From Antechinus flavipes (Eukaryota), in contig NC_067400.1 in assembly GCF_016432865.1 (NCBI RefSeq), positions 54,374,001 to 54,438,000 of the forward strand: a stretch of 64,000 nt of DNA. The letters run 5' to 3'. Below, in pieces: positions 17,549 through 61,522 of the stretch (positions within the stretch are counted from its first letter, which is position 1; every line of letters starts with the position of its first letter). The translations under genes were made by a program, and so were the position numbers. Under the pieces are notes generated by a model that was not told the origin of the DNA, searched no databases, and was given only the letters and a program-made list of their open reading frames with translations.

Positions 17549-17920
17549 CTAGCAGCAACATTGCTTCTTACAGCAGCACTGTTGGCAGCAGCATTTCTGT
17601 TGGCAGCAGCCTTTGCAACAGCCACAGCCCTTGCCACAGCCACAGCCACAGCCACCACAGCCACCACAGCAGCAGGTGCGGCGGCAGCAGACCACTGTAG
17701 GGCTGCAGCAGCCCCCACAGCAGCCACAGCAGCAGGGGCAGCAGCCAGAGCAGCAGCCTACACGGCGGCAGCTACAGGTGGTACAGCAACAATTGCCACA
17801 GCCACCGCAGCCTCCACAGCCACAGCCTCCGCAGCCGCCACAGCCGCCACAGCCACCACAGCCGCAGCCACCACAGCTGTTGCAGGTGGTACAGCTTCCT
17901 CTACAGCCACAACAACCCAT
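17549..17920 (-). CDS. SCYGR: Cys/Gly-rich ultra-high-sulfur keratin-associated protein, SCYGR/KRTAP28-like, copy 1 (123 aa, inverted orphan copy)
   Basis: ATG-initiated intronless ORF MGCCGC...[32 protein letters not shown]...[29 protein letters not shown] lies 101 bp upstream. Central and C-terminal blocks resemble the human SCYGR motifs as recalled. The symbol is family-level only. Confidence 0.9.
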
Positions 17921-18013
17921 AGTGTCAGTATAGAGGGTTCAAATAAGATGAGAGAGAGGACTCAGGAAAGGGGAGGTGAGTGAAGTTTGATACTCTCCTT
18001 CCACAGGGCAGCC

Positions 18014-18021
18014 CTTATATA
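18014..18021 (-). promoter_or_regulatory. TATA box of copy 1
   Basis: CTTATATA on plus (TATATAAG on minus). The TATA-to-ATG segment aligns with that of copies 2-8. Confidence 0.8.
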
Positions 18022-19126
18022 CTCTAGTAGGTGGGGGTGACTGAGTATGTCACAAGATACTTCCTTCTTGTTGCTTATCTCATTTTGATGACATATTTTC
18101 TTTGTCTCACGTTCTCTTCTTCACTAGGATGCCTTTGACTCCTTGGCTACTTTGTCTCTTGGCTCCTTGATTGTCCCAATCCCTGTTTTTTCTATTCTTG
18201 ACTCTACTTCAGCTAGCCCCACCCTTTCTCCAAATATTCATAGTTTAACCCTCACCATCATCCAAAACTCCTCATCACTATTCAAGATCTGGAATTCTAA
18301 GGTATCCTTGTGTGAGCATAATGTTCTGTTCCATCTTTCCTTTTTCTTAATGAGCCTATTTAAAAAAAAAATTCAGACTATTTTGATCCTTCCTAGATGA
18401 ATTGATAATTAATTTATGAAATTATGAAGTAGAGCAGGCACACCCAGTTCTTTGATACTCACTGTGAAAGACTACTATGACAAGGAGAAATGAGGCAGCA
18501 ATTGCATTTTAATAAGGCCCAAAGGATGTAGGCATGAAAATCCAGAAATTATAGAGATATAGTAAAAGGAGATATAGAGTCAAATGCCATTGGGATAGAG
18601 GATGGGATAAAGAAGGGAGGCAGCAGGGGAAAAAGAATTAGGAGGGAAAAAAGCACAGGGACTCACTCATGAAATGATGGAGTAGATTTGGAAGCACTTG
18701 GTAGAGTGGACACAATGGAGATGGAAGCAGATTTGGGGAGTTTGAGGTCTCATTTTATAAGATTTTGGGGAGAAAGAGGCTAATCTTTCTCCTTGCCACC
18801 TTGGGAATTAATCCATTAATATATCCAAATCATCTCAAAGTTTCAGTAAAACTTTAAGGTTAATATATCCATGTCATCCCACAGTTATCAGTAGAACTTC
18901 TACTAGATTTGATGCAAATATCTAAAACTTATCTGGGATTTATTTATCACAGGAGCAAAAATTCCTGACTACAGAGCTTCCCCTAATTCAGCATATCACA
19001 ACATTGTAATTTGTTAAATATACAATTGGCAAATTTGGCTCTTTTTGATCTCTGGAATGGTTTGTATATAACTCCTGCGTTCCTCTTTGCAATCTTTCTT
19101 CCTGATATTGCTACTTTATACTTTTA

Positions 19127-19350
19127 TTGTTGTTAAGTTCTTTCAGTCATGTCCAATTCTTCATGATGCCATTGGGATTTTCTTAGCAAAGATGCTGGAC
19201 TAATTTGCCATTTCCTTCTCCAGATCATTTTACAGATGAAGAAACAAAGGCAAAAAAGGTTAATTAACTTGCTGAGGTTCTGCGGCCATATTTGAAATCA
19301 GGAATATGAGTCTTCCTGATTCCAAACCTGGCACTTTATCCACAGCAACA
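19127..19350 (-). mobile_element. MAR1-like SINE between divergent copies 1 and 2
   Basis: ttcagtcatgtccaattcttc..ttgccatttccttctccag..cattttacagatgaag. Confidence 0.75.
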
Positions 19351-19745
19351 CTTAGCTGCCACTTCATACTGGCTCCTTGTAAATTTACTTATTATACAGA
19401 GGAGGAAAGAGAGACAGAGAGGAAGGAAGAGGAGGAGAAAAAAAGGAGGATAAAATCTGCAAATTACAGATCAGTGAATTTGGCCTGGTAATTTTGCAGA
19501 AAAGATAGAATTATCTAGTACTAAACAATAGTACAATTGGATAAATTAAAAACTGAGCAGTCTCAAAGAGCAACTTAAACTTTTAAGGAGGCCTCCTGAA
19601 ATTCAGACAATACTAAAACAAATAATTTAATGAGGCAGAGGCGGCTCAAAGAGGATGTAAATAAGAAAGTAGAGCTCATGTGATTATCAGAACTGGGATA
19701 AACAACAAAAAACATCATGGGTCCTAGACCAGCTCTTGAGCAGTG

Positions 19746-19753
19746 TATATAAG
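19746..19753 (+). promoter_or_regulatory. TATA box of copy 2
   Basis: TATATAAG 99 bp before the ATG, positionally conserved in all array copies. Confidence 0.85.
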
Positions 19754-19844
19754 GGCTGTCCTGTAGAAGGAGAGCATCAAACTTCACTCATCTCTCCTGA
19801 GTCCTTTCCCTCCTCGCATCATTTGAATCCTCTGTTCTGACACT

Positions 19845-20228
19845 ATGGGTTGTTGTGGCTGTAGAGGAAGCTGTACCACCTGTAACAGCTGTGGTGGCTG
19901 TGGCTGTGGTGGCTGTGGCGGCTGTGGCGGCTGTGGCGGCTGCGGGGGCTGCGGCTGTGGTGGCTGCGGCAGCTGTGGCAACTGTTGCTGTACCACCTGT
20001 ACCTGCCGCCGTGTAGGCTGCTGCTCTGGCTGCTGCCCCTGCTGCTGTGGCTGCTGTGGGGGCTGCTGCAGCCCTACAGTGGTCTGCTGCCGCCGCACCT
20101 GCTGCTGTGGTGGCTGTGGCTGTGGCTGTGGCTGTGGCTGTGGCAAGGGCTGTGGCTGTTGCAAGGGCTGCTGCCAACAGAAATGCTGCTGCCAGCAGTG
20201 CTGCTGTAAGAAGCAATGCTGCTGCTAG
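19845..20228 (+). CDS. SCYGR: SCYGR/KRTAP28-like protein, copy 2 (127 aa)
   Basis: Intact ATG..TAG ORF; TATATAAG at 19746; AATAAA at 20896. Confidence 0.92.
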   Translation: MGCCGCRGSCTTCNSCGGCGCGGCGGCGGCGGCGGCGCGGCGSCGNCCCTTCTCRRVGCCSGCCPCCCGCCGGCCSPTVVCCRRTCCCGGCGCGCGCGCGKGCGCCKGCCQQKCCCQQCCCKKQCCC

Positions 20229-20261
20229 GTGGGAAAACTCTCCACCAATTGGTAAGATTTC

Positions 20262-20515
20262 ACAGGGGTTTAGCAATAGAGCATTGGCCTGAGACTTAAG
20301 AAGATGAGGTCCTAAACCTCACTCTGCCAGTGACTTAACATAAGACCTCATGCATGTCACTTGCACAGACTCAGAGAAAAACCAATCCTCAGAGGGAAGA
20401 GGAACATGAGAGGGCAACGTGATTGTAATTTACCTCATTTCCCTCATTTCACAAAATAAGAAGCTTAAATAAGATGGACCCTGAGATTATTGCCAGCTCT
20501 GAGGTCTGACTGCTA
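20262..20515 (+). mobile_element. Degenerate sense MIR/MIR3 relic in the 3' UTR of copy 2 (homologous in copies 3-8)
   Basis: aatagagcattggcctgag.. (head), ctctgcca..gtcactt (CORE 5' part), ctcatttccctcatttcacaaaat..agatgg..gccagctctga (MIR3 3' part). Confidence 0.55.
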
Positions 20516-20895
20516 TTATTCACTCCTGCTCTTTTCTGGCCTGAATAGAATTGAGGCATCCATGAACATATATGATCCTTTGAGTTATTTGCACTTAATT
20601 AATGCCCCTTCTCAAAGGCACTGTTGCAACTGAGATCTGTCTCCCTATGAGGCTTGTCTCTCAATACAATTGGTCTCAGACAATGAGAAAAGGACACAGC
20701 CCAGCTACTGGAGAATAGTCAAGCCTATGAGCCAAGCAAAGTGGAATCATGATTTTTTTTTAATATTTTCTTTCTTAGTGCTTTTCATCCTCTTTTGTCT
20801 TTTCTATCTTTAATCTTGTTCTTTCCATATGTACTATATATTATTTTACTACTCTGCTGCTCTGGAGTCTTTCTAAATCTTTACTAATTTTTCTC

Positions 20896-20901
20896 AATAA
20901 A
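20896..20901 (+). terminator. Polyadenylation signal of copy 2 (homologues at 26617, 32956, 41488, 50174, 56493, 62168)
   Basis: AATAAA conserved 646-668 nt after the stop in all seven array copies, followed about 35-45 nt later by a TTTTTGTTTG U/GU-rich element. Confidence 0.75.
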
Positions 20902-21872
20902 ATCCAAAAAATGACCATAAAATCACTCATGCTCCTTTTTTGTTTGAATATATGAACAACTCTAATAGACGCACAATTATATCCTCTTGAGGACTGGATT
21001 TTCTCACAAAAGTGGGGCTCTTATCATGTTGCTAGAAGGGGTTAAGGGTTCAATAGAAGAAAAGCACTCAGTTCAGAGACAGCACAAATTTCCATGCATC
21101 TTACCTTGGGAATCCTCAAGGAAATGATCCCTGCTCACAAACCAATGTTGAGAAATGTTTTCCCACCATTACAAGTTTATTGAACATTTCTGATGAATTA
21201 AGACTACAATGTAGCCTTACCCTTTAAATGGGGGTGCCCTTAAAGGATGATCTTTGAATCAAGACCATCTCAACACCTGTGCAACCTTGAGCCCTCCCTG
21301 TGCCCAGTCTGGTACTCTTCCATGATAAAAATAATTACTCTGAAGACCAATAATAGTAAGACGCTGGCTGTCCCCAATAATAGGATCCAGACAAGAATTG
21401 AAAAGTATTTTGGCAGGCCAAAACTATGGACTTACTCCAACAAAATGAAATTTGATAAGAGAAATGCATGTGAGTACATTTTGGTTCAAAAATTCAATTT
21501 CACACGTTCAAGATGAGGGGTTCATAGTACTCATGTAGTTTGTCTGAAAAAGATCTGTAGATTTTGATGGACCACAAGCTCAGTATGAATCAACAGTGTA
21601 CCATGACAGCCAAAACAATGAGTTAGTGTGACCTGAAGCTTCATGGAGAGAAATGACTTTCAAGAATCAGGAAGTAATTATTTCCACCTTAGCTTCCTCT
21701 GCTCACACTTGGAACACTGTGGTCAGTTCTTTCTTCACTATGTAGGAAGATTATTTATACTGTGCTTAGTATCTAAGCCAACAATAGCACTACAGGGTCT
21801 AAATCCCCCAAAAAAATTTTAAATAGAAGAAAAGAATCCACCTGTACAAAAATATGTATGACATCTCCTTTT

Positions 21873-22403
21873 GTTGTTCTTTTGTTTCTTTGTTTTGCTT
21901 TTTATTAAAGTTTTTTTTATTTTTCAAAACATATGCATGGACAATCTTTAACATTAGCCCTTGCAAAACTTATGTTCCAATTGTTTCTCCCTTTCCTCAC
22001 ACCCTCCCCTAGATGGCAAGTAGTCCAAAATATATTAAATATGGTAAAATATATGTTAAATCCAATATATGCATACATATTTATACCATTATTACGCAGC
22101 ACAAGAANNNNNNNNNNNNNNNNNNNNNNNNNNNNNNNNNNNNNNNNNNNNNNNNNNNNNNNNNNNNNNNNNNNNNNNNNNNNNNNNNNNNNNNNNNNNN
22201 NNNNNNNNNNNNNNNNNNNNNNNNNNNNNNNNNNNNNNNNNNNNNNNNNNNNNNNNNNNNNNNNNNNNNNCAAAAAGAGTGAAAATGCTATGTTGTAAAC
22301 CATACTCATTTCCCACAGTCCTCTCTCTGGGTGCAGATGGCTCTCTGCATTACTGAACAATTGAGACTGATTTGAATCATCTCATTGTTGAAGAGAGCCA
22401 CAT
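21873..22403 (-). mobile_element. Short 5'-truncated L1 insertion, spacer 2-3 (contains an N gap)
   Basis: L1 3' UTR between the duplicated ATG(A/T)CATCTC(C/T)TTTT at 21858-21872 and 22404-22418. Confidence 0.85.
22108..22270. other. Assembly gap (163 N)
   Basis: Run of N. Confidence 1.
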
Positions 22404-22840
22404 ATGTCATCTCTTTTTGGAATGGCAAAGAACTGGAAATTAAGGGGATGTTCATCAATTGGGGAATGGCTGAACAAGTTGTAATATATGATTATATTGG
22501 AATACTCTTGCATTCTAAGAAATGACAAGAAGGATGCTTTCAGAAGAACCAGGAAAGAGCTGGTGAACTGATGAATAGTGGAATAAACAAAATCAGGAGA
22601 ACATTGTACAAAGTAACAGCAATATTGTGTGATCAACTGTGAATGATTTAGCTATTGTCAACAATAAAATTATCTAAAATAATTTCAAAGGATTTATGAT
22701 CGAGAGAAATGATTGCTTCTCTCATTTATTTATCTATTAACTATTGGAGAGATTCAGGATTTTTTCCTTCCTATTTCCTCCTTCTCTAACATTTTCTTCA
22801 ATCTTAGACCACACTCAACTAGAAAAACTAGCTTAGATCC

Positions 22841-23015
22841 CAGGGCTTCTTAAAGTTTTTTCTACTTGTGACTCCTTTTCACCTGAGAAATTTTTGTGAC
22901 CCCATGTACATTGGTATAGAAAAGAGGCTTAAAATCAAACACTTCCTGATAATAAATCATAATTTCATAACTCCCTATTCAGTTACACAACCCCATAGAA
23001 GTTTAAGAAGCTTTG
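22841..23015. mobile_element. hAT-type MITE (homologues about 37675-37852, 44437-44616, 58356-58532; right end deleted at about 29440 and 52907)
   Basis: About 14 bp terminal inverted repeats CAGGGCTTCTTAAA / TTTAAGAAGCTTTG. The TSD is ambiguous. Confidence 0.6.
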
Positions 23016-23699
23016 GTTTAGATGAATAAGCAAATTCAAGCCAATTGTGTTTCAGTCAGACATGTACGAATGGATTACTCTTTTTTTTAAAGATTACCTT
23101 ACACTACATTGGTCAGGAAAGAGGTAAGTTACTTTGTTCAAGACTGAATGATCAATCATTTCCCTGGACCCTCATTAGAATAAGCCCACTTCTTATTAGA
23201 ATATTTATTGTTTCATGACTTATTAACGATTCAGATTTGATTTCTCCCCTCAGGAACACACACTCGGCCATGGACATTTAAGCACTGAGTGGGTTTCATG
23301 AGGGATTTTTGAAATTCCAGAGTAGCCCACCCCCTTTTAAAAAAATTATCTTCTGGTAATAACTAATGAAGAAATTAATTACGTTAAAACTATAGCTCTC
23401 AAAGTTCTTATATATCGCATGATAAATAATTCTATCCACTTCCAGAGAAAAAAGTGATGGAATCTGAAGGCAGATTAAAGCATACTATTCTTTACTCTTT
23501 TTATGGGGGGGAGAGGGTCAGAGTTCTTTCCCAACCTAACATGTAAATTTAAAGTTTTAAGATTTTTTTTTAAAGGATGTAGGTTTATAAGCTAAAAAGT
23601 TTACAGAAGGAGATAACTAGAAGAGAAAAGGGCCTTTAATGCATATCAAATGAAGGTCATTTGAAGGAATTATATGATGTTCAACTTCAAGAAAAGAAA

Positions 23700-24000
23700 T
23701 TCAAGGAAGGATAAGATTAATGCCATGTGAAATAGGGAATGGATTTTGACTGTTCAACCCAGAGAGCTTAACTACAAATTATGGATGAAAGTTTCAAAGA
23801 AGCCAATCAGATTTGATATAATAATAAGTAGAACTATGCCTAATAGAATGGATAGTGAGTTCCCTCTTATTGGAGATATTTATACAAACACTGAATGGCC
23901 ATTTCTCAAGTGCCCATAGTGAGGATGCTTTTTCTGGTATGATTGATGGAGCTGGATGCCAAGATCACTTCTGATCTCTCAAATTCTAGGTATTCTGTGA
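23700..24000 (+). mobile_element. L3/CR1 3' end relic (one per spacer)
   Basis: gatagtgagttccctcttattggag..ggatg..caaattctaggtattctgtgatc matches the L3/MIR3-type 3' end. Confidence 0.65.
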
Positions 24001-24099
24001 TCTCTCTAAAAACAGTTCCTCTCTCTAAAAACAGTTCAAATCTTTTATATTCTAAACAATAACCAGAATACTATTTCTTTTCTCTGCTACTTGCTCCAC

Positions 24100-24720
24100 A
24101 ATATAGATTACTCCATCTTCGTCTTTTCATTACAAAGCTTCAGTAAAGAAGTGGTCTCATTCCTTAGGCCCCTAAGATCTGACTTCCATTCCTACAAGTC
24201 ATCTGAAACATCTATCTCTAGGGGTATTAGGCCTCTAAAAGTCAACTCCATTGATTCATTCTCAGTCCTCACTAAAGACCTTCCTGCAATCTCTGAAACT
24301 TGCTCACCCCCCTCTTCTTGATGCCCATTTCTCCTCTGGTTTTTATTTCTCCCCCACATCCTTTTCCCTTCCCCCCACAATCCTCACTGTCATAACTCAA
24401 GCTTTCATCACCTCATACCTGGATTATTGCAATAGCCTTCTATTTGGCCTTCCTGCTTCAAGCCTCTTTCTACTCCAATCCAGCTTCCCAACAGCCACCA
24501 AGTTCAAGTCTGACCTTATCATCTCAACTCAATGTAATCCAGTTTCTCCCCCTAATCCCATTAGTATTTTTGATAGGCTGGTGCACAGAGTTGACTCAAG
24601 TATTTGGAATCCAATATAAACTCCTATGCTTGATGTTTAAATTCTGTACAACCAGACACTCTCTTACTTTTTTAGTCTAACAAATTTCTCTTTTCCTCAC
24701 ACTCTACAATCCTTTCTCTA
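24100..24720 (+). mobile_element. L2 RT relic (one per spacer)
   Basis: Translates to LRSDFHSYKSSET..FSVLTKDL and AFITSYLDYCNSLLFGLPASSL, versus L2 QSGFR..STETAL..LDLSAAFD and LDYCNSLLxGLP. Confidence 0.85.
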
Positions 24721-24816
24721 TGAGACAAGTAGCATAGATGGAATTTCTCCACTCGCCCCCAATTTTAGAAGTCAAGAATGGGAAGGTAAGTTTTTGGCCT
24801 AAAGAATGGGAAGGTA

Positions 24817-24962
24817 GGGCACCTAGGTGGCACAGTGGATAGAGCACCAGTTCTCAAGTCAGGAGGACCTGAGTTCAAATTTGAATTAAGACATTTATCA
24901 TTTCCTAGTTGTGTGACCCTTGCCAAGTCTCATAACCCCAATTGCCTCAGAAAAAAAAAAAA
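24817..24962 (+). mobile_element. WSINE1-like SINE, spacer 2-3
   Basis: gggcacctaggtggcacagtggatagagcacc..aaccccaattgcctc plus poly-A, directly after AAAGAATGGGAAGGTA. Confidence 0.9.
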
Positions 24963-25024
24963 GGAACATAAAAGAAATTAAGTGTCTGACCTTTGGTAGT
25001 ACAGCCAGTAAAAGGGCCAGGGCT

Positions 25025-25180
25025 AAGATAGAATCATGAGCTCTTAGTGATATAGACATGGAGTTAGAAAAAACTTTTAAAAACATCTCATCCAACTCTT
25101 ATTTTACAGATAAGAAAACTGAGTCCTGGGAGGTTGTGCTTTGTCTAAGATTATAAAGGCAATGAGAATCAGAGGCAGGA
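25025..25180 (-). mobile_element. MIR3 relic upstream of the promoter (one per spacer)
   Basis: agatagaatcat..catctcatccaactcttattttacagataagaaaactgag. Confidence 0.7.
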
Positions 25181-25487
25181 AATAATAAAGACAATACATG
25201 GACCCAACTTTCTTGACAATATTTCTAACATTCTTCCCAGCCTGCCAAATGGTGAAAGTAATGATCTTCACAATAGTATCCCCTCTCATGAATATTACCT
25301 CATGAAATTATTTGTTTTAGGATTTCCTTGAAAGAGAGTGAAATTCAAGAAATCCTAAAACAATTAATTTCATGAGGCAGAGGAGGCTCAAAGAGGAAGT
25401 AAATAAACAAGTAGAGCTCATGTGATTATCTGAACTGGGATAAACAACAAAAAACATCATGGGTCCTGGACCAGCTCTTGAGCAATG

Positions 25488-25495
25488 TATATAAG
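25488..25495 (+). promoter_or_regulatory. TATA box of copy 3
   Basis: TATATAAG 99 bp before the ATG. Confidence 0.85.
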
Positions 25496-25586
25496 GGCTG
25501 TCCTGTAGAAGGAGAGCTTCAAACTTCACTCACCTCTCCTGAGTCCTTTCTCTCCTCACCTCATTTGAACTCTCTGTTCTGACACT

Positions 25587-25964
25587 ATGGGTTGTTGTGG
25601 ATGTAGAGGAAGCTGTACCACCTGCAACAGCTGTGGTGGCTGTGGCTGTGGTGGCTGTGGCGGCTGCGGGGGCTGCGGCTGTGGTGGCTGCGGCGGCTGC
25701 GGAGGCTGTGGCAACTGTTGCTGTACCACCTGTAGCTGCCGCCGTGTAGGCTGCTGCTCTGGCTGCTGCCCCTGCTGCTGTGGCTGCTGTGGGGGCTGCT
25801 GCAGCCCTACAGTGGTCTGCTGCCGCCGCACCTGCTGCTGTGGTGGCTGTGGTGGCTGTGGCTGTGGCTGTGGCAAGGGCTGTGGCTGTGGCTGTTGCAA
25901 GGGCTGCTGCCAACAGAAATGCTGCTGCCAGCAGTGCTGCTGTAAGAAGCAATGCTGCTGCTAG
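25587..25964 (+). CDS. SCYGR: SCYGR/KRTAP28-like protein, copy 3 (125 aa)
   Basis: Intact ORF; TATATAAG at 25488; AATAAA at 26617. Confidence 0.92.
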   Translation: MGCCGCRGSCTTCNSCGGCGCGGCGGCGGCGCGGCGGCGGCGNCCCTTCSCRRVGCCSGCCPCCCGCCGGCCSPTVVCCRRTCCCGGCGGCGCGCGKGCGCGCCKGCCQQKCCCQQCCCKKQCCC

Positions 25965-27884
25965 GTGGGAAAACTTTCCACCAATCGGTAAGATTTCACA
26001 GGGGTTTAGCAATAGAGCATTGGCCTGAGACTTAAGGAGATGAGGTCCTAAACCTCACTCTGCCAGTGACTTAACTTAAGACCTCATGCATGTCACTTAC
26101 ACAGACTCAGAGAAAAACCAATCCTCAGAGGGAAGAGGAACATGAGAGGGCAATGTGATTCTAATTTACCTCATTTCCCAAAATAAGAAGCTTAAATAAG
26201 ATGGACCCTGAGATTATTGCCAGCTCTGAGGTCTGACTGCTATTATTCACCCCTGCTCTTTTCTGGCCTGAATAGAATTGAGGCATCCATGAACATATAT
26301 GATCCTTTGAGTTATTTGCACTTAATGCCCCTTCTCAAAGGCACTGTTGCAACTGAGATCTGTCTCCCTATGAGGCTTGTCTCTCAATACAATTGGTCTC
26401 GGACAGTGAGAAAAGGACACAGCCCAGCTACTGGAGAATAGTCAAGCCTATGAGCCAAGCAAAGTGGAATCATGATTTTTAAAAATATTTTCTTTCTCGT
26501 TGAGTTTCATCTTCTTCTATCTTTCTACCTTTTATCTTATTCTTTCTATATGTACTCTGTATTATTTTAGTACTCTACTGCTCTGGAGTCTTTCTAAATC
26601 TTTACTATTTATTCTCAATAAAATCTAAAAAACAACCATAAAATTGCTCATGATCTTTTTTTTGTTTGAATGTATGGAAAACTCTAGTCTAAGAGAAGCA
26701 CAATTATATCCTCTTGAGGACTGGATTTTCTCACAAAAGTGGAGCTCTTATCATATTGCTACTAAAGGTAAAGGGTTCGATAGATGAGAAGCACTCAGTT
26801 CAGAGATAACACAAATTTCTGTGCCACTGGTACGCATCTTACCTTGGGAATCCTCAAGGAAATGATTCCTGGTCACACACCAATATTGAGAAATATTTTC
26901 CCTCCATCACATGTTTATGGAACATTTCTGATGAATAAAGACAACATAGGCTTATCCCTGGGAATGGATATACCTTTAAAGAATGATCTTTGAATCAAGA
27001 CCATCTCAACACCTGTACAACCTCAAATGTGGTGTCCTCCCAGTCTGACAAGCTTCCATGATAGGAATAATTACAGGGGCACTACAAAGCTAACAAACAC
27101 CCAGGTTTCCCCATTCTAGTCATAGGTCTCCTTGGAGTGGAGCACCCTAACATATCTGAGGAGCCCTCTAATTAATTTGAAAAGATGCATGCCTTTAGTG
27201 GAGCCACTACCACATTGTTCCTTTGCTCTTTTGTTCCTCTTGCTCCATGACAATCATAGGGATATTGCTTCTGGCTGTGCCAAACGGAGCCTTCAAGACA
27301 AGATCAGTATGTGAAGACTGGAAGTGCTGCCAGTCTAGAGCTTCTGAAAGGAAAAGTCCTCCCTGGGGTGGCTGCCCTGTGCAATATCTAATGGAAGAAG
27401 CTGTCTTTTCTGTTGGTTCAAGTCCTTAAGATGCAAGACCTTATTTTACCTTCCTTATTGTCCCTGAACACATTGTTGTGATTTGTAGCATATGTGTGTG
27501 TGTGTGTGTGTGTGTGCATTTTGCCTTAAGAAACAAAGTTGACAATCCAGAAAAATCTATTGACTATGTTCCATTTTTTAAAAAATTCAACATTGTTAGT
27601 GTATTAGTAACTCTGTTTGGTCACTACAGCAGGAAAACAAGATATAATCCTGATTGTCTTTTTTCCCACTTGTGTGATTTGTATAAACATCTATGTTATA
27701 TGTATTATTAAAATGTTAAAATAAAGGACTTGTTATCCATATTTTCTTTCTCTTTTGAATTCTACAATCTAGATTTGTTAGGATTCTAGCAGCTATTTTT
27801 ATCACTACCTACAGTGTAGAAACAAGATAATTGCTATTTGAGAAGGGAAGATTAATAATTTTCTATCAAGTAAATACTCATGTG

Positions 27885-28246: not shown

Positions 28247-28254
28247 TAAAAGCT

Positions 28255-28870: not shown

Positions 28871-28874
28871 GAAG

Positions 28875-49046: not shown

Positions 49047-49054
49047 TATATAAG
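49047..49054 (+). promoter_or_regulatory. TATA box of copy 6
   Basis: TATATAAG 98 bp before the ATG. Confidence 0.85.
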
Positions 49055-49144
49055 GGCTGTCCTGTGAAGGAGAGCATTAAACTTCATTCACCTCTCCTGA
49101 GTCCTTTCTCTCCTCGCATCATTTGAACCCTCTGTTCTGACACT

Positions 49145-51424: not shown

Positions 51425-51700
51425 TGAGAGATAAAGAGAGAGAGAAGAGGGAGGATGAGAAAAATATAAGGGGAAGGCAGGAGCAATAGAGAAATATAAG
51501 GAGAGGAGAAGAATAGGGGGAAAAGCTAGAAGGAGCAAGGGAGAGGAGAAGGAGAGAGGAAGAGGAAGAGAGAGGAGGAAAAAGAGACAGAAAAGAAGAA
51601 AGAGGACAGGAAGTAGAAAAAGAAGAAGAACAAGGAGAAGTAGAAGGAGAAGAAGAAGGAGAAGAAGGAGAAGGAGGAGGAGGAGGAAGAGGAGGAGGAA
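51425..51700. repeat. Polypurine tract
   Basis: Near-pure A/G on the plus strand. Confidence 0.95.
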
Positions 51701-54700
51701 CATAAAAGCTTCAAACTATAGATCAGTGAATTTGGCATGGTAATGTAGAAACGACAGAAGTATCTACCACTAACAATAGGACAATTGGGTAGATTAAAAA
51801 CTGAGCAGTTTCAAAGAGTAATTTAAACTTTCAAGAAGGTCTCCAGGGGAGTGCTCTGGGCTTTGCTGTTTAACATTTTCAATAATGACCTAGAAAAGAG
51901 TGTGGATGACATCCCTAGAAAATCCACAGGGGACAAAAGAGTGGGCGTGATGATTAATTCCATCAAATGATGTCAGGTTTCAAAAATATTTTGAGAGACT
52001 AAAACTATGGGCTGACTCTAACAAAATGAAATTTGATAAGGAGAAATGTATATGTGCACATTTAGATTCAAAAATTCAATTGCACACATTCAAGATGAGG
52101 GAGGAACAGTACAAACGTAGTTTGCATGAAAAAGATCTATGGATTTTGCTGGACTCCAAGCTCAGTACCAATCAACATGTACCATGTTGTACCATGACAG
52201 TCAAAAGAATGAGGTAGTGAGACCTGAAGCTTCATGGAGAAATGTGACTTTCAGGAATCAGGAAGTCATTGTTTCTACCTGAGCTTCCTCTACTCATACT
52301 TGGAACTCTATGGTCAGTTTTTTCTTCACCTTGTAGGAAGAATATTTATACTGTGCATACTATCTAAGCCAAAAATAGCACTAAAGGGTCTAAATACCAA
52401 AAAGTTTTTTTTTTTTAACATAGAAGAGAAAATCCATATGTCAAAAATATTTAAGACATCTCTTTTTGGAATGGCAAAAAATTGGAAATTAAGGGGATGG
52501 CCATCAATTGGGCAATGGCTGAACAAGCTGTAATATATGATTATGTTGGACTACTATTACACTCTAAGAAATGACAAGCAGGATCCTTTCAGAAGAACCA
52601 GGAAAGAGTTAGGTGGGTTGATGTATAATGGAGTAAGCAGCAGAACCAGAAGATTGTACAAAGTAACAGCAATATTGCCTGATGATCATTTCATCATCAA
52701 CTTTGAGTGACTTGGCTATAGTCAACAATAAAACAATATAAGATCATTTCAAATGATTTATGATTGAGAGAAATGATTATTTCTCTCATTTATTATTTAT
52801 CCATTTATTATTGGAGAAATTCAGCATTTTCCCTTCCTATTTTCTCCTTCTTTAACATTCTCTTCAATCTTAGACCCCACTCAGCTGGGAAAATTAGCTT
52901 GGATCTTAGGGTTTCTTAAAGCTTTTTCTGCTTTCTACCCCTTCTCACCTGAGAAATTTTTGTGTTCCTCCATGTATATTGGTATATAAAACAGGCATAG
53001 AAATCAAACATTTCCCAAAAATAAGTCATAATTCAGGCCAATTGTGTTTTAGTCAGACATGTATGAATGGATTTCCCCCCCCCACCTTTTTAAGATTACT
53101 TTACCTTATGGTGGTCAGGAAAGAGGGTAAATTCCTTCATCCAAGAATAAATGATCAATCATTTGCACAGACCCTCCTTAGAATAATCCCACTTCTTATT
53201 AGAATATGTATTCTTTCATTACTTGTTAATCAATCAGAGTTGATTTCTACCCTCAAAAACACTCACTCTTTGTTTCATCAGGATTTTTTGACATTCCAGA
53301 ATGCCACTGACCAGTTTTATTAATTATCCTCTGGTAATAATTAATGAAGAAATTAATAACCCAAAAACTATGTCTCTCAAATTTCTTGTATGTCACATGA
53401 TGAATAATTCTATCCACTTCCAGAGAAAGAAGTGATGCAATCTGAATGCAGATTAAAACATTCTATTTTCAACTATTTTTATTTGAGGTGGGGTATGGGG
53501 ATTCTTTCACCAAGCTAACATATAAATTTAAAATTTTAAGATTGTATTTTTAAGGTTATATGTTTATAATCTAAAAAGTATAAACTTTTATAAAAAAGGA
53601 GATAATCAGAAGAGAGAAGAGCCTTTAATTCATATCAAATGAAGGTCATTTGAAGGAATTATATGATGCTCAACCTCAAGAAAAGAAATTCAAGGAAGTT
53701 AAGGTCAATGTCATGTGAAATAGGGAATGGACTTTTACTGCTCAGACCAAAGGGCTTAACTGGAAATGATGGATGAAAGTTTCAAAGAAGCCAATCAGAT
53801 TTTATATAACAGAAAATGTCCCAGTAATTATAACTATGCCTAATAGAATGGATAGTGAGTTCCCTCTTATTGGAGATCTTCAAGCAAGCCCTGGATGGTC
53901 ATTTCTCAAGTGCCCATAGTGAGGATGCTTTTTCTGGTATGATTGGTGGAGCTGGATGCCAAGATCACTTCTGATCTCTCAAATTCTGGGATTCTGTGAT
54001 CTCTCTAAAAACAGTTCCTCTCTCTAAAAACAGTTCAAATCTTCCATATCCTAAACAATAACCATAATACTATTTCTTTTCTCTGCTACCTACTCCCCAG
54101 TATGTTACCCATCTTTGTCTTTTCATTACAAAGCTTCACTAAAAAAGTGGTCTCATTCCTTAGGCCCCTAAGATCTGACTTCCATTCCTACAAGTCATCT
54201 GAAACACCTATCTCTAGGGGCATCAGGCTCTAAAAGTCAACTCCATTAACTCATTCTCAGTCCTCACTAAAGACCTTCCTGCAATCTCTGAAACTCTTGC
54301 TCATTCCCTCTTCTTGATGCTCATCATCCCTTTCCCTCTCCCCACAATCCTTACTCTTATAGCTCAAGCTTTCATCACCTCATGCCTGGATTATTGCAAT
54401 AGCCTTTTATTTGGCCTTCCTGCTTCAAGCCTCTTTCTATATCAATCCAGCTTCCCAACAGCCACCAAATTCAAGTCTGACCTTATCATCCCAACTCAGT
54501 GTCATCTACAGTCTCCCTATTCCCCTTAGTATTTTTGATAGTCTAGTGCACAGATTTGACCCAAATATTTAGAATCCAATATAAACTCCTATGCTTGATA
54601 TATAAACGCTGTACAAACTGACCCTCATTTGCATTTTTAGTCTAACAAATGTCTCTCTTCCTCACACTTTGCAATCCTTTCTCTATGAGATAAGTAGGAT

Positions 54701-55339
54701 AGATGGAATTTCTGCCCTCTGCCCCCAGTTTTATAAGTAAAGACTGAGAAGGTAAGTTTCTGGCCTAAAGAATGGGAAAGTAAAAGAAATTAAGTTTCTG
54801 GCCCATAGTAGTGTAGCTAGTAAAAGGGGTAGGGCTAAGATAGAATCATGGGTTCTTATGAATGTAGATATGGAGTCGGAAGGAATCTCCAAAAACATCT
54901 CACAAACTCTTATTTTACAGATAAGGAAACTGAGTCCTAGGGAGGTTGTGATTTGCCTAAGATTATAAAGGCAATGAGAATCAGAGGCAGGATGTTATAA
55001 AGACAATATATGGACTCAACTTTCTTGATACCATATGCAACATTCTTCCCAGCATGTCAAATGGTGAAAGTAATGATCTTCAAATTAGTATCCCCTCTCA
55101 TGAGTATTATCCAATGTTTAGGTTCCCTGCCTAGGACTAAGTATTTCAACTTTGTAAACTTCCTATTTGAATATGGCTTTGAAATAGAGTGAAATTCAGG
55201 AAATCCTAAAACAAATAATTTAAGGAGGCAGAGGAGGCTCAAAGAGGAAGTAAACAAGAAAGTAGAGCTCATGTGATTATCTGAACTGGGATAAACAAAC
55301 TAAAAACATTATGGGTCCTGCACCAGCTCTTAAGGAGTG

Positions 55340-55347
55340 TATATAAA
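55340..55347 (+). promoter_or_regulatory. TATA box of copy 7
   Basis: TATATAAA 99 bp before the ATG. Confidence 0.85.
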
Positions 55348-55438
55348 GGATGTCCTGTAGAAGGAGAGCATCAAACTTCACTCACCTCTCCTGAGTCCTT
55401 TCTCTCCTCACATCATTTGAACTCTCTGTTCTGACATT

Positions 55439-55834
55439 ATGGGTTGTTGTGGCTGTAGAGGAAGCTGTACCACCTGCAACAGCTGTGGTGGCTGCGGCTG
55501 TGGTGGCTGTGGTGGCTGTGGTGGCTGCGGTGGCTGCGGCTGTGGAGGCTGTGGCGGCTGTGGCAACTGTTGCTGTACCACCTGTACCTGCCGCCGTGTA
55601 GGCTGCTGCTCTGGCTGCTGCCCCTGCTGCTGTGGCTGCTGTGGGGGCTGCTGCAGCCCTACAGTGGTCTGCTGCCGCCGCACCTGCTGCTGTGGTGGTT
55701 GTGGCTGTGGCTGTGGTGGCTGTGGCTGTGGCTGTGGCTGTGGCTGTGGCAAGGGCTGTGGCTGTGGCAAGGGCTGCTGCCAACAGAAATGCTGCTGCCA
55801 GCAGTGCTGCTGTAAGAAGCAATGCTGCTGCTAG
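55439..55834 (+). CDS. SCYGR: SCYGR/KRTAP28-like protein, copy 7 (131 aa)
   Basis: Intact ORF; TATATAAA at 55340; AATAAA at 56493. Confidence 0.92.
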
Positions 55835-57499
55835 GTGGGAAAACTCTCCACCAATCGGTAAGATTTCACAGGGGTTTAGCAATAGAGCATTGGCCTGAGA
55901 CTCAAAGAGATGAGGTCCTAAACCTCACTCTGCCAGTGACTTAACATAAGACCTCATGCATGTCACTTGCACAGACTCAGAGAAAAATCAGTTATCAGAT
56001 GAAAAAGGGACGTGAGAAGAAAATGTGATTGTAATTTATCTCATTTCCCTCATTTCACAAAATAAGAGGCTTAATAAGATGGATTCTGAGATTATTGTTA
56101 GCTCTGAGGTCTGACTGCTATTATTCACCCCTGCTCTTTTCTGGCCTGAATAGAATTGAGGCATCCATGAACATATATGATCCTTTGAGTTATTTGCACT
56201 TAATGCCCCTTCTCAAAGGCACTGTTGCAACTGAGATCTGTCTCCGTAAGAGGCTTGTCTCTCAATACAATTGGTCTCGGACAGTGAGAAAAGGACACAG
56301 CCCAGCTACTGGAGAATAGTCAAGCCTATGAGCCAAGCAAAGTGGAATCATGATTTTAAAAATATTTTCTTTCTCAGCAAGTTTCAACCTTTTCTGTCTT
56401 TTCTACCTTTAGTCTTGTTCTTTCTATATGTAGTACATATTATTTTACTACAATGATGCTCTGGAGTCTCTAAATCTTTACTAATTTTTCTCAATAAAAT
56501 CCAAAATATGACCATAAAATCGCTCATGTTCTTCTTTGTTTGAATGTATGAAAAACCCTAGCCCAAGAGAAATACAATCATATCCTCTTGAGGACTGGAT
56601 TTTCTCACAAAAGTGGGGCTCTTACCATGTTGCTACTAAGGGTTAAGGGTTCAATAGATGAGAATAATTAATTTGAGAGATAACACAAATTTCCATGCCA
56701 CTGGTATGCATCTTACCTTGGGAATCCTTAAGGAAATGATTCCTGATCACAAACCAATGCTGAAAAATGGTTTTCACCCATTACAAATTTATTGAACATT
56801 TCTGATAAATTGAGACAATGTATCCTTATCGCTGGATAAGAGGATGTCCTTAATGCATGATCTTTGTATCAAGACCATCTCGATACCTCAGCAACTCAAA
56901 TGTGGTATCCTCCCTGTGCCCAGTCTGGCACACTTCAATGATAGGAATAATTACTCTGAAGACCAATGATAGCTTATATTATCTCTGGCTGCCCCCAGTG
57001 GTAAGATCTGGACAAGTATTCAAAAGTATTTTGGCAGGCCCAAACTATGGACTTACTCCAACAAAATGAAATTTGATAAGGAGAAATGCATGTGTGCACA
57101 TTTATCAAAAATTCAATTGTACACATTCAAGATGAGAGAGGAACAGTACAAATGTAGTTTGCATGAAAAAGATCTGTAGATTTTGCTGGACCACAAGTCC
57201 AATATGAAACAACAGTGTACCATGACAGCCAAAAGAATGAGCTAGTGTGACATGAAGCTTTATGGAGAGACATGAGAAATCATTTTCAGGAATCAAAAAG
57301 TAATTGTTTCCACCTTAGCTTCTTCTGCTCACCCTTGGAACACTGTGGTCAGTTCTTTCTTCACCATGTAGGAAGATTATTTATACTGTGCATAGTATCT
57401 AAGCCAACAATAGCATTACAGGAGCTAAGTCCCCCTCAAAAAAGTTTTAAATAGAAGAAAAGAATCCATCTATACAAAAATATTTATGACATATTTTTT

Positions 57500-57914
57500 G
57501 TTGTTGGTTTTTTTTTTATTAAAGCTTTTTCTTTTTCAAAACATATGCATGGATAATTCTTTAATATTAGCCCTTGCAAAACCTTGTCTTCCAATTTTTC
57601 CTCCCTTCCCCCAGACCCTCTCCTAGATGGCAAATAGTCTAAAATATGATAAATATGGTAGAAATATAGGTTAAATCTAATATACGTATACATATTTATA
57701 CGATTATTATGCTGCACAAGAAAAATCAAATAAAACCAGTTTATAAAAAAAAGAAGAGAAGAAAATGCAAGCAAGCAACAATGAAAAGAGTGAAAATGCT
57801 ACACCGTAAACCATACTCAGTTCCCACAGTCCTCTCTCTGGGTGCAGATGGCTCTCTTCATCACTGAACAATTGAAACTGATTTGAATCTTCTTATTGTT
57901 GAAGAGAGCCACAT
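57500..57914 (-). mobile_element. Same L1 insertion, spacer 7-8 (gap-free, 415 bp)
   Basis: TSD copies at 57486-57499 and 57915-57929. Confidence 0.85.
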
Positions 57915-60348
57915 ATGTCATCTCTTTTTGGAATGGCAAAGAACTGGAAATTAAGGAGATGTTCATCAACTGGGGAATGGCTGAACAAGTTGTAATCTAT
58001 GATTATATTGGAATACTATTGCACTCTAAGAAATGACAAGAAGGATGCTTTCAGAAGAACCAGGAAAGAGTTGGTGAAATGATGAATAGTGGAATAAACA
58101 GAACCAGGAGAACATTGTACATAGTAACAGCAATATTGTGTGATCAACTGTGAATGATTTAGCTATTGCCAACTATAAAATTATCTAAAATAATTTAAAA
58201 GGATTTTTGATTAAGAGAAATGATTGCTTCTCCCATTTATTATTTATCCATTTATTATTGGAGAGATTCAAGATTTTTTTCCTTCCTATTTCCTCCTTCT
58301 CTAACATTCTCTTCAATCTTAGGTCCCACTCAACTGGGAAAACTACTTTAGATCCTAGAGCATCTTAAAGTTTTTTCTACTTGTGACTCCTTTTCTCCTG
58401 AGAAATTTTTGTGTGACCCCATATATACTGGTATAGAAAAGAGGTCTAAAATAAAACATTTCCTGATAATAAATCAAAATTTTATGATACCCTATTCAGT
58501 TACACAACTTCATAGAAGTTTAGGAAGCTTTGCTTTAGATGAATAATCAGATTCAGGCCAATTGTGTTTCAGTCAGACATTTATAAATGGATTACTTTTA
58601 TTTTTTAAGATTACCTTACATTAGGGTGGTCAGGAAAGAGATAAGTTACTTTGTCCAAGATTGAATGATCAATCATTTCCCTGGACTCTCATTAGAATAA
58701 GCCCACTTCTTATTGGAATATTTATTGTTTCATGACTTATTAACCAATCAGAGTTGATTTCTACCCTCAGGAACATTCTCTCTCCCAAGAACATTTAAGC
58801 ACTGAGTGGGTTCCATGAGGATTTTTTGGCATTCCAGAGTGCCACTGACCCTTTTTTAAAAATTATCCTCTGGCAATAATTAATGAATAAATTAATTACC
58901 CTAAAACTAAATCTCTCAAACTTCTTATATATCACATGCTGAATAATTCTATCCACTTCCAGAGAAAGAAGTGATGGAATCTGAATGCAGATTAAAGCAT
59001 ACTATTCTTTACTCTTTTTACTGGGGGAGGATAGTTAGAGTTGTTTCCCAGCCTAACATGTAAATTTAAAATTTTAAGGGTTTTTTTTTTTTAAGGATGT
59101 AGGTTTATAAGCTGAAAAGTTGATAGAAGGAGATAACTAGAACAGAAAAGAGCCTTTAATACATATCAAATGAAGGTCATTTGAAGGAATTATATGATGT
59201 TCAACTTCAAGAAAAGAAATTCAAAGTAGTTAAGGTCAATGTCATGTGAAATACGGAATGGACTTTTACTGCTCAGCCCAAAGGGCTTAACTGGAAATGA
59301 TAGATGAAAGTTTCAAAGAAGCCAAACAGATTTCATATAACAGAAAATGTCCCGGTAATTATAACTATGCCTAATAGAATGGATAGTGAGTTCCCTCTTA
59401 TTGGAGATCTTCAAGCAAGCCCTGGATGGTCATTTCTCAAGTGCCCATAGTGAGGATGCTTTTTCTGGTATGATTGGTGGAGCTGGATGCCAAGATCACT
59501 TTTGATCTCTCAAATTCTGGGATTCTGTGATCTCTCTAAAAACAGTTCCTCTCTCTAAAAACAGTTCAAATCTTCCATATCCTAAACAATAACCATAATA
59601 CTATTTCTTTTCTCTGGTACCTACTCCCCAATATGTTACCCATCTTCGTCTTTTCATTACAAAGCTTCACCAAAGAAGTGGTCTCATTCTTTAGTCCACT
59701 AAGATCTGACTTCCATTCCTACAACTCATCTGAAACACCTGTCTCTAGGGGCACCAGGACTCTAAAAAGTCAATGGAGTTGACTCATTCTCAGTCCTCAC
59801 TAAAGACCTTCCTGCAATCTCTGAAACTCTTGCTCACCCTCCTGTTCTTGATGCCCATTTCTCTTCTGGTTTTCATTTCTCCCCCACATGCCCTTCCTTC
59901 CCCCCCCCCGCCCCGCAATCCTCACTGTCAAAATTCAAGCTATCATCACATCATATCTGGATTATTGCAATAGCCTTCTATTTGGCCTTCCTGCTTCAAG
60001 CCTCTTTCTACTCCAATCCAGCTTCTCAACAGCCACCAAGTTCAAGTCTGATCTTATCATCCCAACTCAATGTTATCCACTGTCTCCCTATTCCCCTTGG
60101 TATTTTGGATAGGCTGGTGCACAGAGTTGACCCAAATATTTTGACTCCAATATAATCTCCAATGCTTGATATATACATTCTGTACAAACTGACCCTCACT
60201 TACATTTTTAATCTAACAAATATCTCTCTTCCTCATACTCTGCAATCCTTTATGAGATAAGTAGGATAGATGGAATTTCCCCACTAGCCCTCAATTTTAT
60301 AAGTCAAGACTGGGAAGGTGAGTTTTTGGCCTAAAGAATGGGAAGGTA

Positions 60349-60494
60349 GGGCAGCTAGGTGGCACAGTGGATGGAGCACCAGCTCTGAAGTCAGAAGGAT
60401 CTGAGTTCAAATTTGACCTAAGACACTTATCATTTCCTAGCTGTGCGACACCAGGCAAATCACTTAACCCCAATTGTGTCAGAAAAAAAAAGAA
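60349..60494 (+). mobile_element. WSINE1-like SINE, spacer 7-8
   Basis: 16 bp TSD AAAGAATGGGAAG(G/A)TA at 60333-60348 and 60495-60510. Confidence 0.9.
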
Positions 60495-61063
60495 AAAGAA
60501 TGGGAAGATAAAAGAAATTAAGTATCTGTCCTGTGGTACTATAGCCAGTAAAAGGGTCAGGACTAGGATAGAAACATGGACTTTTAGTGATGTAGACATG
60601 GAGTTGGAGGGAACTTTGAAACATTCATCCAATTCTTTTTTTACAGATAAGAAAATTGAGTCCTGGGGAGGTTGTGATTTGTCTAAGGTTATAAAGGCAA
60701 TGAGAATCAGAGGCAGAATATTAAAAAGACAATATATGGACTCAAGTTTCTTGACACCTTATGCAACATTCTTCCCAGTATACCAAATGGTGAAAGTAAT
60801 GATCCTCACAATAGTATCCCCTCTCATGAAATGACCCAGTGTTCAACTTCCCTGTCTAGGACTAAGTATTTCAGCTTTTTAAACTTACCATTAGAATATG
60901 GCTTTGAAACAGAGTGAAATTCAGGAAATCCTGAACCAAATAATTTCATGAGGCAGAGGAGACTCAAAGAGGAAGTAAACAAGAAAGAAGAGCTCATGTG
61001 ATTATCAGAACTGGGATAAACAATAAAAAACATCATGGGTCCTGGACCAGCTCTTGAGCAGTG

Positions 61064-61071
61064 TATATAAG
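61064..61071 (+). promoter_or_regulatory. TATA box of copy 8
   Basis: TATATAAG 99 bp before the ATG. Confidence 0.85.
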
Positions 61072-61162
61072 GACTGTCCTGTGGAAGGAGAGCATCAAAC
61101 TTCACTCACCTCTCCTGAGTTCTTTCTCTCCTCACCTCATTTGAATCCTCTGTTCTGACACT

Positions 61163-61522
61163 ATGGGTTGTTGTGGCTGTAGAGGAAGCTGTACCACCTG
61201 CAACAGCTGTGGTGGCTGTGGCTGTGGTGGCTGTGGCGGTTGTGGTGGCTGCGGTGGCTGCGGCGGCTGTGGCAATTGCTGTACCACCTGTACCTGCCGC
61301 CGTGTAGGCTGCTGCTCTGGCTGCTGCCCCTGCTGCTGTGGCTGCTGTGGGGGCTGCTGCAGCCCTACAGTGGTCTGCTGCCGCCGCACCTGCTGCTGTG
61401 GTGGCTGTGGTGGCTGTGGCTGTGGCTGTGGCTGTGGCAAGGGCTGTGGCTGTTGCAAGGGCTGCTGCCAACAGAAATGCTGCTGCCAGCAGTGCTGCTG
61501 TAAGAAGCAATGCTGCTGCTAG
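61163..61522 (+). CDS. SCYGR: SCYGR/KRTAP28-like protein, copy 8 (119 aa)
   Basis: Intact ORF with 52 Cys and 33 Gly of 119 residues by manual count; TATATAAG at 61064; AATAAA at 62168. Confidence 0.92.

What the first reader, a model, noticed from the sequence alone, without database searches (positions are those of the whole stretch)
17549..61522. Tandem expansion of at least eight intact SCYGR/KRTAP28-like ultra-high-sulfur genes in a marsupial
Seen: eight ATG-to-TAG intronless ORFs with no frameshift or stop, each with a TATA box at -98 to -101 and a conserved distal AATAAA; seven sit in a 5.7-8.7 kb tandem unit that continues off the window. Established: intronless, clustered Cys-rich KRTAP genes are typical hair-matrix genes, and human SCYGR genes cluster at 2q36.3. 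Inference: because whole spacers with their TE relics are co-duplicated at high similarity, this is a recent lineage-specific amplification rather than one-to-one orthology with eutherian SCYGR paralogues.
Basis: partly seen in the sequence, partly recalled or inferred. Interest (0 to 1): 0.7.

Follow-up and report, generated by a model that had tools for sequence, protein, structure and literature searches.

The report
Marsupial SCYGR (KRTAP28) hair-protein gene array
Eight intact, near-identical genes for tiny cysteine- and glycine-rich proteins of the SCYGR (KRTAP28) family lie in a row; about ten such genes were already counted in opossum, wallaby and platypus, so this is an ordinary member of a known family, not a special expansion.

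Summary
The window has exactly eight intact ATG-to-TAG ORFs of 119-131 aa with 44% Cys and 29% Gly. Each has a TATA box at -98 to -101 and an AATAAA about 650 nt after the stop. Seven sit in direct tandem units of 5.7-8.7 kb that run off the right edge. No N gap touches a gene.

The family call is right. The only database hit is a cat "SCYGR7-like" protein (86% identity), and the nearest ESM Atlas clusters are SCYGR7-like and SCYGR9-like. Composition matches published KRTAP28 values, not KRTAP5. Nearly all change is at third codon positions (dN/dS about 0.07), so the genes are under purifying selection.

"Recent lineage-specific expansion" is only partly right. The alignable spacers show that the units arose after the marsupial-eutherian split. 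But the units differ by 10-16%, and none is near-identical. Runs under other organism labels appear to hold the gene 1-2 stretch at about 97.5% identity. Published subfamily-28 counts are about ten in opossum, wallaby, platypus and eutherians. The best reading is unit turnover in an old array of about ten copies, with CDS-limited gene conversion that also reaches the inverted gene 1.

Expression and synteny could not be tested. This genome's array appears undescribed, but the family and its mode of evolution are known.

The parts
16903..18021 (-). Gene 1 (inverted): TATA at 18014-18021, CDS 17549-17920 (123 aa), AATAAA at 16903-16908
   Evidence: Only 17543-18025 aligns to the other copies. 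The CDS is 96.5% identical to the others but the flanks are unrelated. Faint collinear homology remains just before the AATAAA.
19746..20901 (+). Gene 2: TATA at 19746, CDS 19845-20228 (127 aa), AATAAA at 20896
   Evidence: Head-to-head with gene 1, with the TATA boxes about 1.7 kb apart.
25488..26622 (+). Gene 3: TATA at 25488, CDS 25587-25964 (125 aa), AATAAA at 26617
   Evidence: This gene was the query.
31812..32961 (+). Gene 4: TATA at 31812, CDS 31911-32303 (130 aa), AATAAA at 32956
   Evidence: It has the longest first Gly-Cys repeat, a 39-nt period in 3.1 copies.
40361..41493 (+). Gene 5: TATA at 40361, CDS 40460-40837 (125 aa), AATAAA at 41488
49047..50179 (+). Gene 6: TATA at 49047, CDS 49145-49516 (123 aa), AATAAA at 50174
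   Evidence: The upstream spacer carries a unit-specific interspersed-repeat insertion at about 46.6-48.9 kb.
55340..56498 (+). Gene 7: TATA at 55340, CDS 55439-55834 (131 aa), AATAAA at 56493
61064..62173 (+). Gene 8: TATA at 61064, CDS 61163-61522 (119 aa), AATAAA at 62168
   Evidence: The spacer after it continues to the window end and aligns to earlier spacers.
19597..64000 (+). Direct tandem array of seven units (5.7-8.7 kb), open at the right end. It includes two-unit blocks: 19597-28157 matches 55190-63708, and 25328-33414 matches 48882-56954, both at about 87%
   Evidence: self-BLAST; identity by region.
22108..22270 (.). Assembly gap 1, in the spacer 1.9 kb after gene 2
   Evidence: The flanks are collinear with unit 7.
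35646..37046 (.). Gaps 2 and 3 with the 1046-bp piece between them, which is a 96.5% copy of 34588-35645. This may be assembly redundancy

Best explanation
This is the left end of the SCYGR gene cluster of a marsupial. [quoted passage not shown] It is an ultra-high-sulfur keratin-associated-protein-like family.

Each gene is a single-exon unit: TATA box, about 70-nt leader, 360-396-nt CDS, and about 650-nt 3'UTR ending at an AATAAA. The proteins have five parts: a fixed N-terminus, a variable Gly-Cys repeat, an invariant central block, a second variable Gly-Cys repeat, and an invariant Gln/Lys/Cys tail.

By analogy with the family (inferred, not shown here), they are made in the keratinising hair shaft. 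There they would cross-link keratin filaments and other matrix proteins through their many cysteines.

The array is not a net expansion. It is an ancient array of about ten copies, and its units 2-8 were renewed by unequal crossing-over or duplication about 0.11-0.18 substitutions per site ago. That is roughly tens of millions of years. The coding sequences, including that of the much older inverted gene 1, are kept almost identical by purifying selection plus gene conversion confined to the CDS. Replication slippage keeps changing the length of the two repeat regions in steps of whole codons.
For: Family:
[quoted passage not shown] E is 6.7e-9 with 86% identity over residues 1-124.
- The local Smith-Waterman score lies 15 sd above composition-preserving shuffles, also for the non-repeat C-terminal part alone.
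- In the alignment, the N-terminus, central block and tail match almost letter for letter.
- The ESM Atlas nearest clusters are SCYGR7-like (0.97), SCYGR9-like (0.95) and a mouse RIKEN gene cluster (0.95). KRTAP4/5-type clusters score only 0.84-0.87.
- Composition is C 43.8, G 28.9, S 3.7, Q 4.0%. Published KRTAP28 values are C 38.4, G 30.9, S 7.7, Q 4.2 (PMC4180150).

Coding and constrained:
- 22 of 25 variable ungapped sites are third codon positions.
- Mean dN is 0.012 and mean dS 0.162, a ratio of 0.07. All indels are whole codons inside the repeats.

Turnover rather than expansion:
- Units align at 83-90% over kilobases. Nucleotide diversity is 0.09-0.14 in spacers.
- Subfamily 28 has 9-13 genes in platypus, opossum and six eutherians, and 10 in wallaby.

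Gene conversion:
- Diversity is 0.005 in the central CDS block and 0.006 in the tail, against 0.03-0.10 in the 3'UTR.
- Only 5 of 81 third positions vary in non-repeat blocks, against 122 of 611 3'UTR sites (Fisher p = 0.002).
- Gene 1's CDS is 96.5% identical to the others, yet its flanks are unalignable apart from a faint collinear trace before the AATAAA.
- GENECONV and RDP events for KRTAP28 were reported in wallaby. Concerted evolution of high-cysteine KRTAPs is described in PMC2528016.

Hair expression in the family: human SCYGR8 marks a hair-shaft cluster together with KRTAPs in a spatial atlas (bioRxiv 10.1101/2025.09.09.675235).
Against:
- Only one outside homologue could be retrieved, because HMMER's composition filter drops this family. 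No tree with other marsupials or eutherians could be built.
- Synteny with the human 2q36.3 neighbours is untested. The 17 kb to the left shows no recognisable gene.
- Low synonymous diversity in the non-repeat blocks could partly reflect constraint on mRNA structure (z = -3.3) rather than conversion.
- Ages rest on an assumed neutral rate.
- The literature counts come from 2008-2014 draft assemblies.
Confidence: 0.8

Rival explanations
1. One reading: a recent amplification specific to this lineage, which raised copy number above the ancestral marsupial state.
For: - Whole spacers, including dispersed-repeat relics, are co-duplicated.
- All eight proteins are nearly identical.
- Pairwise unit identities fall in a narrow band, as a burst would produce.
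Against: - Units are 10-16% diverged, and no pair exceeds about 90% outside the CDS.
- Opossum, wallaby and platypus already have 9-10 copies.
- Runs under other organism labels hold 42-48% of the 31-mers of the gene 1-2 stretch, implying orthologues at about 97.5% identity.
Confidence: 0.15
2. The copy number is inflated by assembly error, such as haplotigs or mis-joined repeats around the three gaps.
For: - All three gaps sit at the same point of the unit.
- A 1-kb piece between two gaps is a 96.5% copy of its neighbour.
Against: - The eight genes and their spacers differ from each other by 10-16%, and each has its own indels and repeat lengths. That is far more than allelic difference.
- Only the 1-kb piece looks redundant, and it holds no gene.
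Confidence: 0.04
3. The genes are conserved and expressed, but their main role is not in the hair matrix. Possible roles are another cornified tissue or thiol-based metal binding.
For: - Wu et al. 2008 noted no functional or expression data for subfamily 28.
- The protein is 86% identical between a marsupial and a cat. That is tighter than expected for a generic matrix filler.
- 44% Cys would bind metals.
Against: - Human SCYGR8 is co-expressed with KRTAPs in the hair shaft.
- The family is absent from dolphin (0 copies) in PMC4180150 Table 1, as expected for a hair gene.
- Gene structure and clustering are typical of KRTAPs.
Confidence: 0.1

Closest known systems
SCYGR1-10 (human 2q36.3), equal to KRTAP subfamily 28 of Wu, Irwin and Zhang 2008 (PMC2528016) and Khan et al. 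2014 (PMC4180150)
   Same: - Small single-exon genes in a cluster of their own.
- About 40% Cys and 30% Gly, with low Ser.
- Same motif order as the cat SCYGR7-like protein: N-terminus, Gly-Cys repeats, central block and Gln/Lys/Cys tail.
- Copy number close to ten.
- Species-specific similarity, with gene conversion reported.
   Different: - The CDS is somewhat longer (360-396 nt, against 207-351 nt listed for eutherian KRTAP28 in the supplement seen).
- Cys content is slightly higher (44%).
- One member is inverted and has old flanks.
- Synteny and expression are not shown here.
KRTAP5 (ultra-high-sulfur, human chromosome 11)
   Same: Cys- and Gly-rich, intronless, in tandem arrays, with size polymorphism from repeat slippage.
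   Different: KRTAP5 has about 19% Ser (PMC2528016 Table 2), and members of that group carry Pfam Keratin_B2_2. These proteins have 3.7% Ser and no Pfam match even at E = 10. Atlas clusters carrying Keratin_B2_2 score lower than the SCYGR clusters.
Ovine and caprine 'KRTAP28-1' (PMC6523819, PMC7074440)
   Same: The name only.
   Different: That gene is a high-sulfur KAP with a 255-bp ORF on goat chromosome 1, named independently (abstracts). It is a naming clash and should not be used as a comparator for SCYGR.

Membership tests
SCYGR / KRTAP subfamily 28 | Significant sequence similarity to an annotated SCYGR protein, beyond shared composition | tested here: met
   Cat SCYGR7-like: E = 6.7e-9, 86% identity. 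Smith-Waterman z = 15 against shuffles. Aligned. Only one comparator was available.
SCYGR / KRTAP subfamily 28 | Composition: about 38-40% Cys, about 31% Gly, low Ser and Pro, almost no Leu or Tyr | tested here: met
   C 43.8, G 28.9, S 3.7, P 1.6, L 0, Y 0, against the tables in PMC4180150 and PMC2528016.
SCYGR / KRTAP subfamily 28 | Small single-exon ORF with its own promoter and poly(A) signal | tested here: met
   119-131 aa, TATA at about -99, AATAAA at about +650. The absence of introns is inferred from uninterrupted ORFs, not from RNA.
SCYGR / KRTAP subfamily 28 | Separate tandem cluster (KRTAP 'cluster 4') of about ten genes, syntenic with human 2q36.3 | tested here: inconclusive
   Eight genes lie in 44 kb, with no other KRTAP type in the window.
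SCYGR / KRTAP subfamily 28 | Expression in the keratinising hair follicle | not testable with these tools
No RNA holder was listed.
KRTAP5 | High Ser (about 19%) and Keratin_B2_2-type repeats | tested here: not met
   Ser 3.7%. No Pfam family at E up to 10. HMMER's bias filter weakens this negative result.

The most novel reading that the evidence does not exclude
The non-repeat CDS blocks show almost no synonymous change across all eight copies, including an anciently separated inverted paralogue. The protein is also 86% identical between marsupial and cat. On the novel reading, this reflects more than gene conversion: selection would act on the sequence itself, for example on the unusually stable mRNA fold, as reported for human SCYGR2. 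It could also act to hold a fixed dose of about ten copies since before the monotreme split. SCYGR would then be a sequence-specific, dosage-controlled hair component rather than a generic sulfur-rich filler.
Probability: 0.12. Interest if true: 0.5.

Novelty: new member of a known kind. Interest (0 to 1): 0.2.

Why it matters
The result adds a clean, fully intact marsupial example to a poorly studied family, for which Wu et al. reported no functional data in 2008. Whole-unit turnover, CDS-limited gene conversion and codon-wise repeat slippage can all be read directly in one stretch of sequence. It also carries a practical warning. MAFFT mistakes these proteins for DNA, and HMMER's composition filter hides almost all their relatives. 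That may be why none of the eight exact sequences is in the 15-billion-protein collection. It does not change what is known about KRTAP evolution.

Tried and rejected
- **Pfam and PDB sequence searches:** no hits. This is uninformative for such biased sequences.
- **Word search on the whole protein and on residues 44-125, plus the full HMMER scan:** only the cat protein came back. The likely reason is that its non-biased N-terminal extension lets it pass the bias filter. The blank is therefore not evidence of rarity.
- **Exact look-up of all eight proteins:** none is in the collection, although the ESM Atlas holds gene 3's protein letter for letter.
- **align_proteins:** failed three times. 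MAFFT reads proteins made of C, G, T, A and N letters as nucleotides. Alignments were made with mafft --amino in scripts instead.
- **Read laying:** They were masked or left out.
- **Pfam on spacer ORFs to name the transposon relics:** nothing found.
- **Search for a dasyurid neutral rate in PMC4408412:** none given.
- **Antisense and off-frame ORFs (Ala/Thr-rich, Gln/Pro-rich, Leu/Trp-rich):** rejected as by-products of the stop-free repeat. The TATA box, the ATG context, the poly(A) signal and the third-position substitution pattern all fit the Cys/Gly frame.
- **Mirror-like series of unit lengths (5.7, 6.3, 8.5, 8.7, 6.3, 5.7 kb):** judged mostly coincidental, because all units are direct and the long ones owe their length to different insertions.
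Full report
**Observation**

Each runs ATG to TAG, is 119-131 aa long and has 52-57 cysteines (43-44%). Each has a TATATAA box 98-101 nt before the ATG and an AATAAA 641-668 nt after the stop. A low-stringency protein and DNA search of the whole window found no further copy or fragment, so nothing lies in the first 17.5 kb.

Self-comparison confirms direct tandem units for genes 2-8. Blocks of 1.7-7.6 kb align at 83-90%, and the last spacer runs into the window's end.

Gene 1 is inverted, head-to-head with gene 2. It shares only 17543-18025 with the others, which spans from just before its TATA box to six bases past its stop.

**Gaps**

The three N runs all lie in spacers, at least 1.9 kb from any ORF, promoter or poly(A) signal, so no frame depends on them. 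The flanks of gaps 1 and 3 are collinear with the ungapped unit 7. All three gaps begin at the same homologous point of the unit. The 1046-bp piece between gaps 2 and 3 is a 96.5% copy of the piece before gap 2. That piece may be an assembly redundancy that lengthens the spacer between genes 4 and 5. Nothing was filled in.

**Which frame, and is it coding?**

Other frames and the opposite strand also give long ORFs. That is expected of a stop-free GC-rich repeat. The Cys/Gly frame is the real one for four reasons:
- The promoter, the ATG context and the poly(A) signal are on its strand.
- 22 of 25 variable ungapped sites are third positions of that frame.
- Mean dN is 0.012 against dS 0.162, a ratio of 0.07, and every indel is a whole number of codons inside the two Gly-Cys repeats (repeat periods of 9-42 nt).
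- That frame matches an annotated protein.

**Family**

Pfam and PDB gave nothing. [quoted passage not shown] E is 6.7e-9 with 86% identity over residues 1-124.

The single hit is a filter artefact. That protein carries a 78-residue ordinary N-terminal extension, while purely Cys/Gly proteins fall to HMMER's composition correction.

In a local alignment the fixed N-terminus, the central block and the Gln/Lys/Cys tail match almost letter for letter. The Smith-Waterman score is 15 standard deviations above composition-preserving shuffles, also for the non-repeat half alone.

The ESM Atlas places the protein next to clusters named SCYGR7-like (0.97), SCYGR9-like (0.95) and a mouse RIKEN gene (0.95). 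These rank ahead of Keratin_B2_2-bearing KRTAP clusters at 0.84-0.87.

Composition is C 43.8, G 28.9, S 3.7. This fits KRTAP28 (C 38.4, G 30.9, S 7.7; PMC4180150) and not KRTAP5 (S about 19%; PMC2528016).

SCYGR and KRTAP28 are two names for one family. PMC11576641 lists SCYGR10 in its table and names KRTAP28-10 among the same set of polymorphic pseudogenes. PMC13204572 places SCYGR6 in KRTAP type 28. The sheep and goat "KRTAP28-1" is a different gene that shares the name.

**Is it an expansion, and is it recent?**

Spacers that still align at 83-90% cannot date from before the marsupial-eutherian split. Three results go against "recent expansion":
- No pair of units exceeds about 90% outside the CDS. 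Spacer diversity is 0.09-0.14, which is about 0.11-0.18 substitutions per site. With a mammalian neutral rate of about 2-2.6e-9 per site per year (my own figure, an inference), that is tens of millions of years.
- Runs filed under two other organism labels hold 42-48% of the 31-mers of the gene 1-2 stretch. That share corresponds to about 2.5% divergence. A paralogue at 10% divergence would share about 4% of the words. Those runs therefore appear to hold the orthologue of this very pair, and the paralogues look four to six times older than that species split. This is indirect, because no reads could be laid.
- Wu et al. counted 10 subfamily-28 genes in opossum, 9 in platypus and 10-13 in six eutherians. 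Khan et al. counted 10 in wallaby and placed the subfamily in the mammalian ancestor.

Copy number here (eight, with more to the right) is therefore the norm. The array is better described as turnover of units in an old array of about ten copies. Two-unit blocks (19597-28157 against 55190-63708, and 25328-33414 against 48882-56954, both about 87%) show that some steps copied more than one unit.

**Gene conversion**

Diversity among genes 2-8 falls to 0.005 in the central CDS block and 0.006 in the tail. It is 0.066 in the 5'UTR, 0.03-0.10 in the 3'UTR and up to 0.14 beyond. Only 5 of 81 third positions vary in non-repeat blocks, against 122 of 611 3'UTR sites (p = 0.002).

Gene 1 makes the case more strongly. 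Its CDS is 96.5% identical to the others, as close as they are to each other. Its 5' flank beyond the TATA box shows no similarity. Its 3' flank keeps only a faint collinear trace in the last 100 nt or so before the AATAAA (z of 5-8 in six of seven comparisons).

Gene 1 is therefore an old paralogue whose coding part has been overwritten. This agrees with the scan's other note on this window. It also matches the concerted evolution described for high-cysteine KRTAPs and the conversion events reported for wallaby KRTAP28.

Most of the measured dS sits in the two repeats. There, slippage and alignment ambiguity between TGC/TGT and GGN codons inflate it.

**Function**

Nothing here shows expression. 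By family analogy the proteins would be disulfide cross-linkers of the hair shaft. Two literature points support this: human SCYGR8 marks a hair-shaft cluster together with KRTAPs, and the family is missing from dolphin. I rate the hair-matrix role as likely, and it is inferred.

**What could not be done**

No tree with other species was possible.
- Synteny is untested.
- The species name (a dasyurid, perhaps the yellow-footed antechinus) comes only from other notes of this scan.

**Verdict**

The family assignment is correct. The evolutionary reading is overstated. This is a new set of members of a known family, evolving in the known way.

Noticed in passing
window 22108-22270, 35646-35825, 36872-37046: All three N gaps begin at the same homologous point of the tandem unit, right after an A-rich end that corresponds to about 57722 in the ungapped unit 7. 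The 1046-bp piece between gaps 2 and 3 is a 96.5% copy of 34588-35645. This is either a young local duplication or an assembly redundancy.
   Followed up: partly
window 28047-28225, 34300-34669, 42735-43259, 51541-51697, 63531-63636: Polypurine (AGG/AGA)n tracts of 100-520 bp lie about 2.1-2.3 kb downstream of genes 3, 4, 5, 6 and 8. They cause the GC- and AT-skew spikes seen in the composition profile. Units 2 and 7 lack them. They might act as break points for unequal crossing-over.
   Followed up: no
window 25587-25964 (+): The CDS folded as RNA gives -201 kcal/mol for 378 nt, with z = -3.3 against dinucleotide shuffles. A paper reports human SCYGR2 as having the lowest structure z-score of the whole human transcriptome (PMC9403969). 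A stable mRNA fold may be a family trait.
   Followed up: partly
window 16903-17548 (gene 1's 3' flank): Gene 1's 3' flank is unalignable with the other 3'UTRs, except for a faint collinear match in the last 100 nt or so before the AATAAA, at the same distance from the stop. This marks gene 1 as an old paralogue with a converted CDS.
   Followed up: yes
window 46600-48900, also 3995-5376 and 13338-13820: An interspersed repeat is inserted only in the spacer before gene 6. Its ORF resembles the C-terminal end of LINE-1 ORF2, judged by eye, with no Pfam hit. Copies at 87-89% identity lie outside the array in both orientations. It could serve as a marker to date that unit in other species.
   Followed up: no
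tools, not sequence: Proteins made almost only of C, G, T, A and N letters are read as DNA by MAFFT, so align_proteins fails. HMMER's bias filter removes nearly the whole family. Automated annotation and homology pipelines may miss SCYGR genes systematically.
   Followed up: partly
window 19597-19845 and equivalents: About 250 nt upstream of each ATG in genes 2-8 is conserved, with several invariant AT-rich blocks between -250 and -110. Gene 1 keeps only the TATA box. These blocks are candidate hair-specific promoter elements and were not analysed.
   Followed up: no
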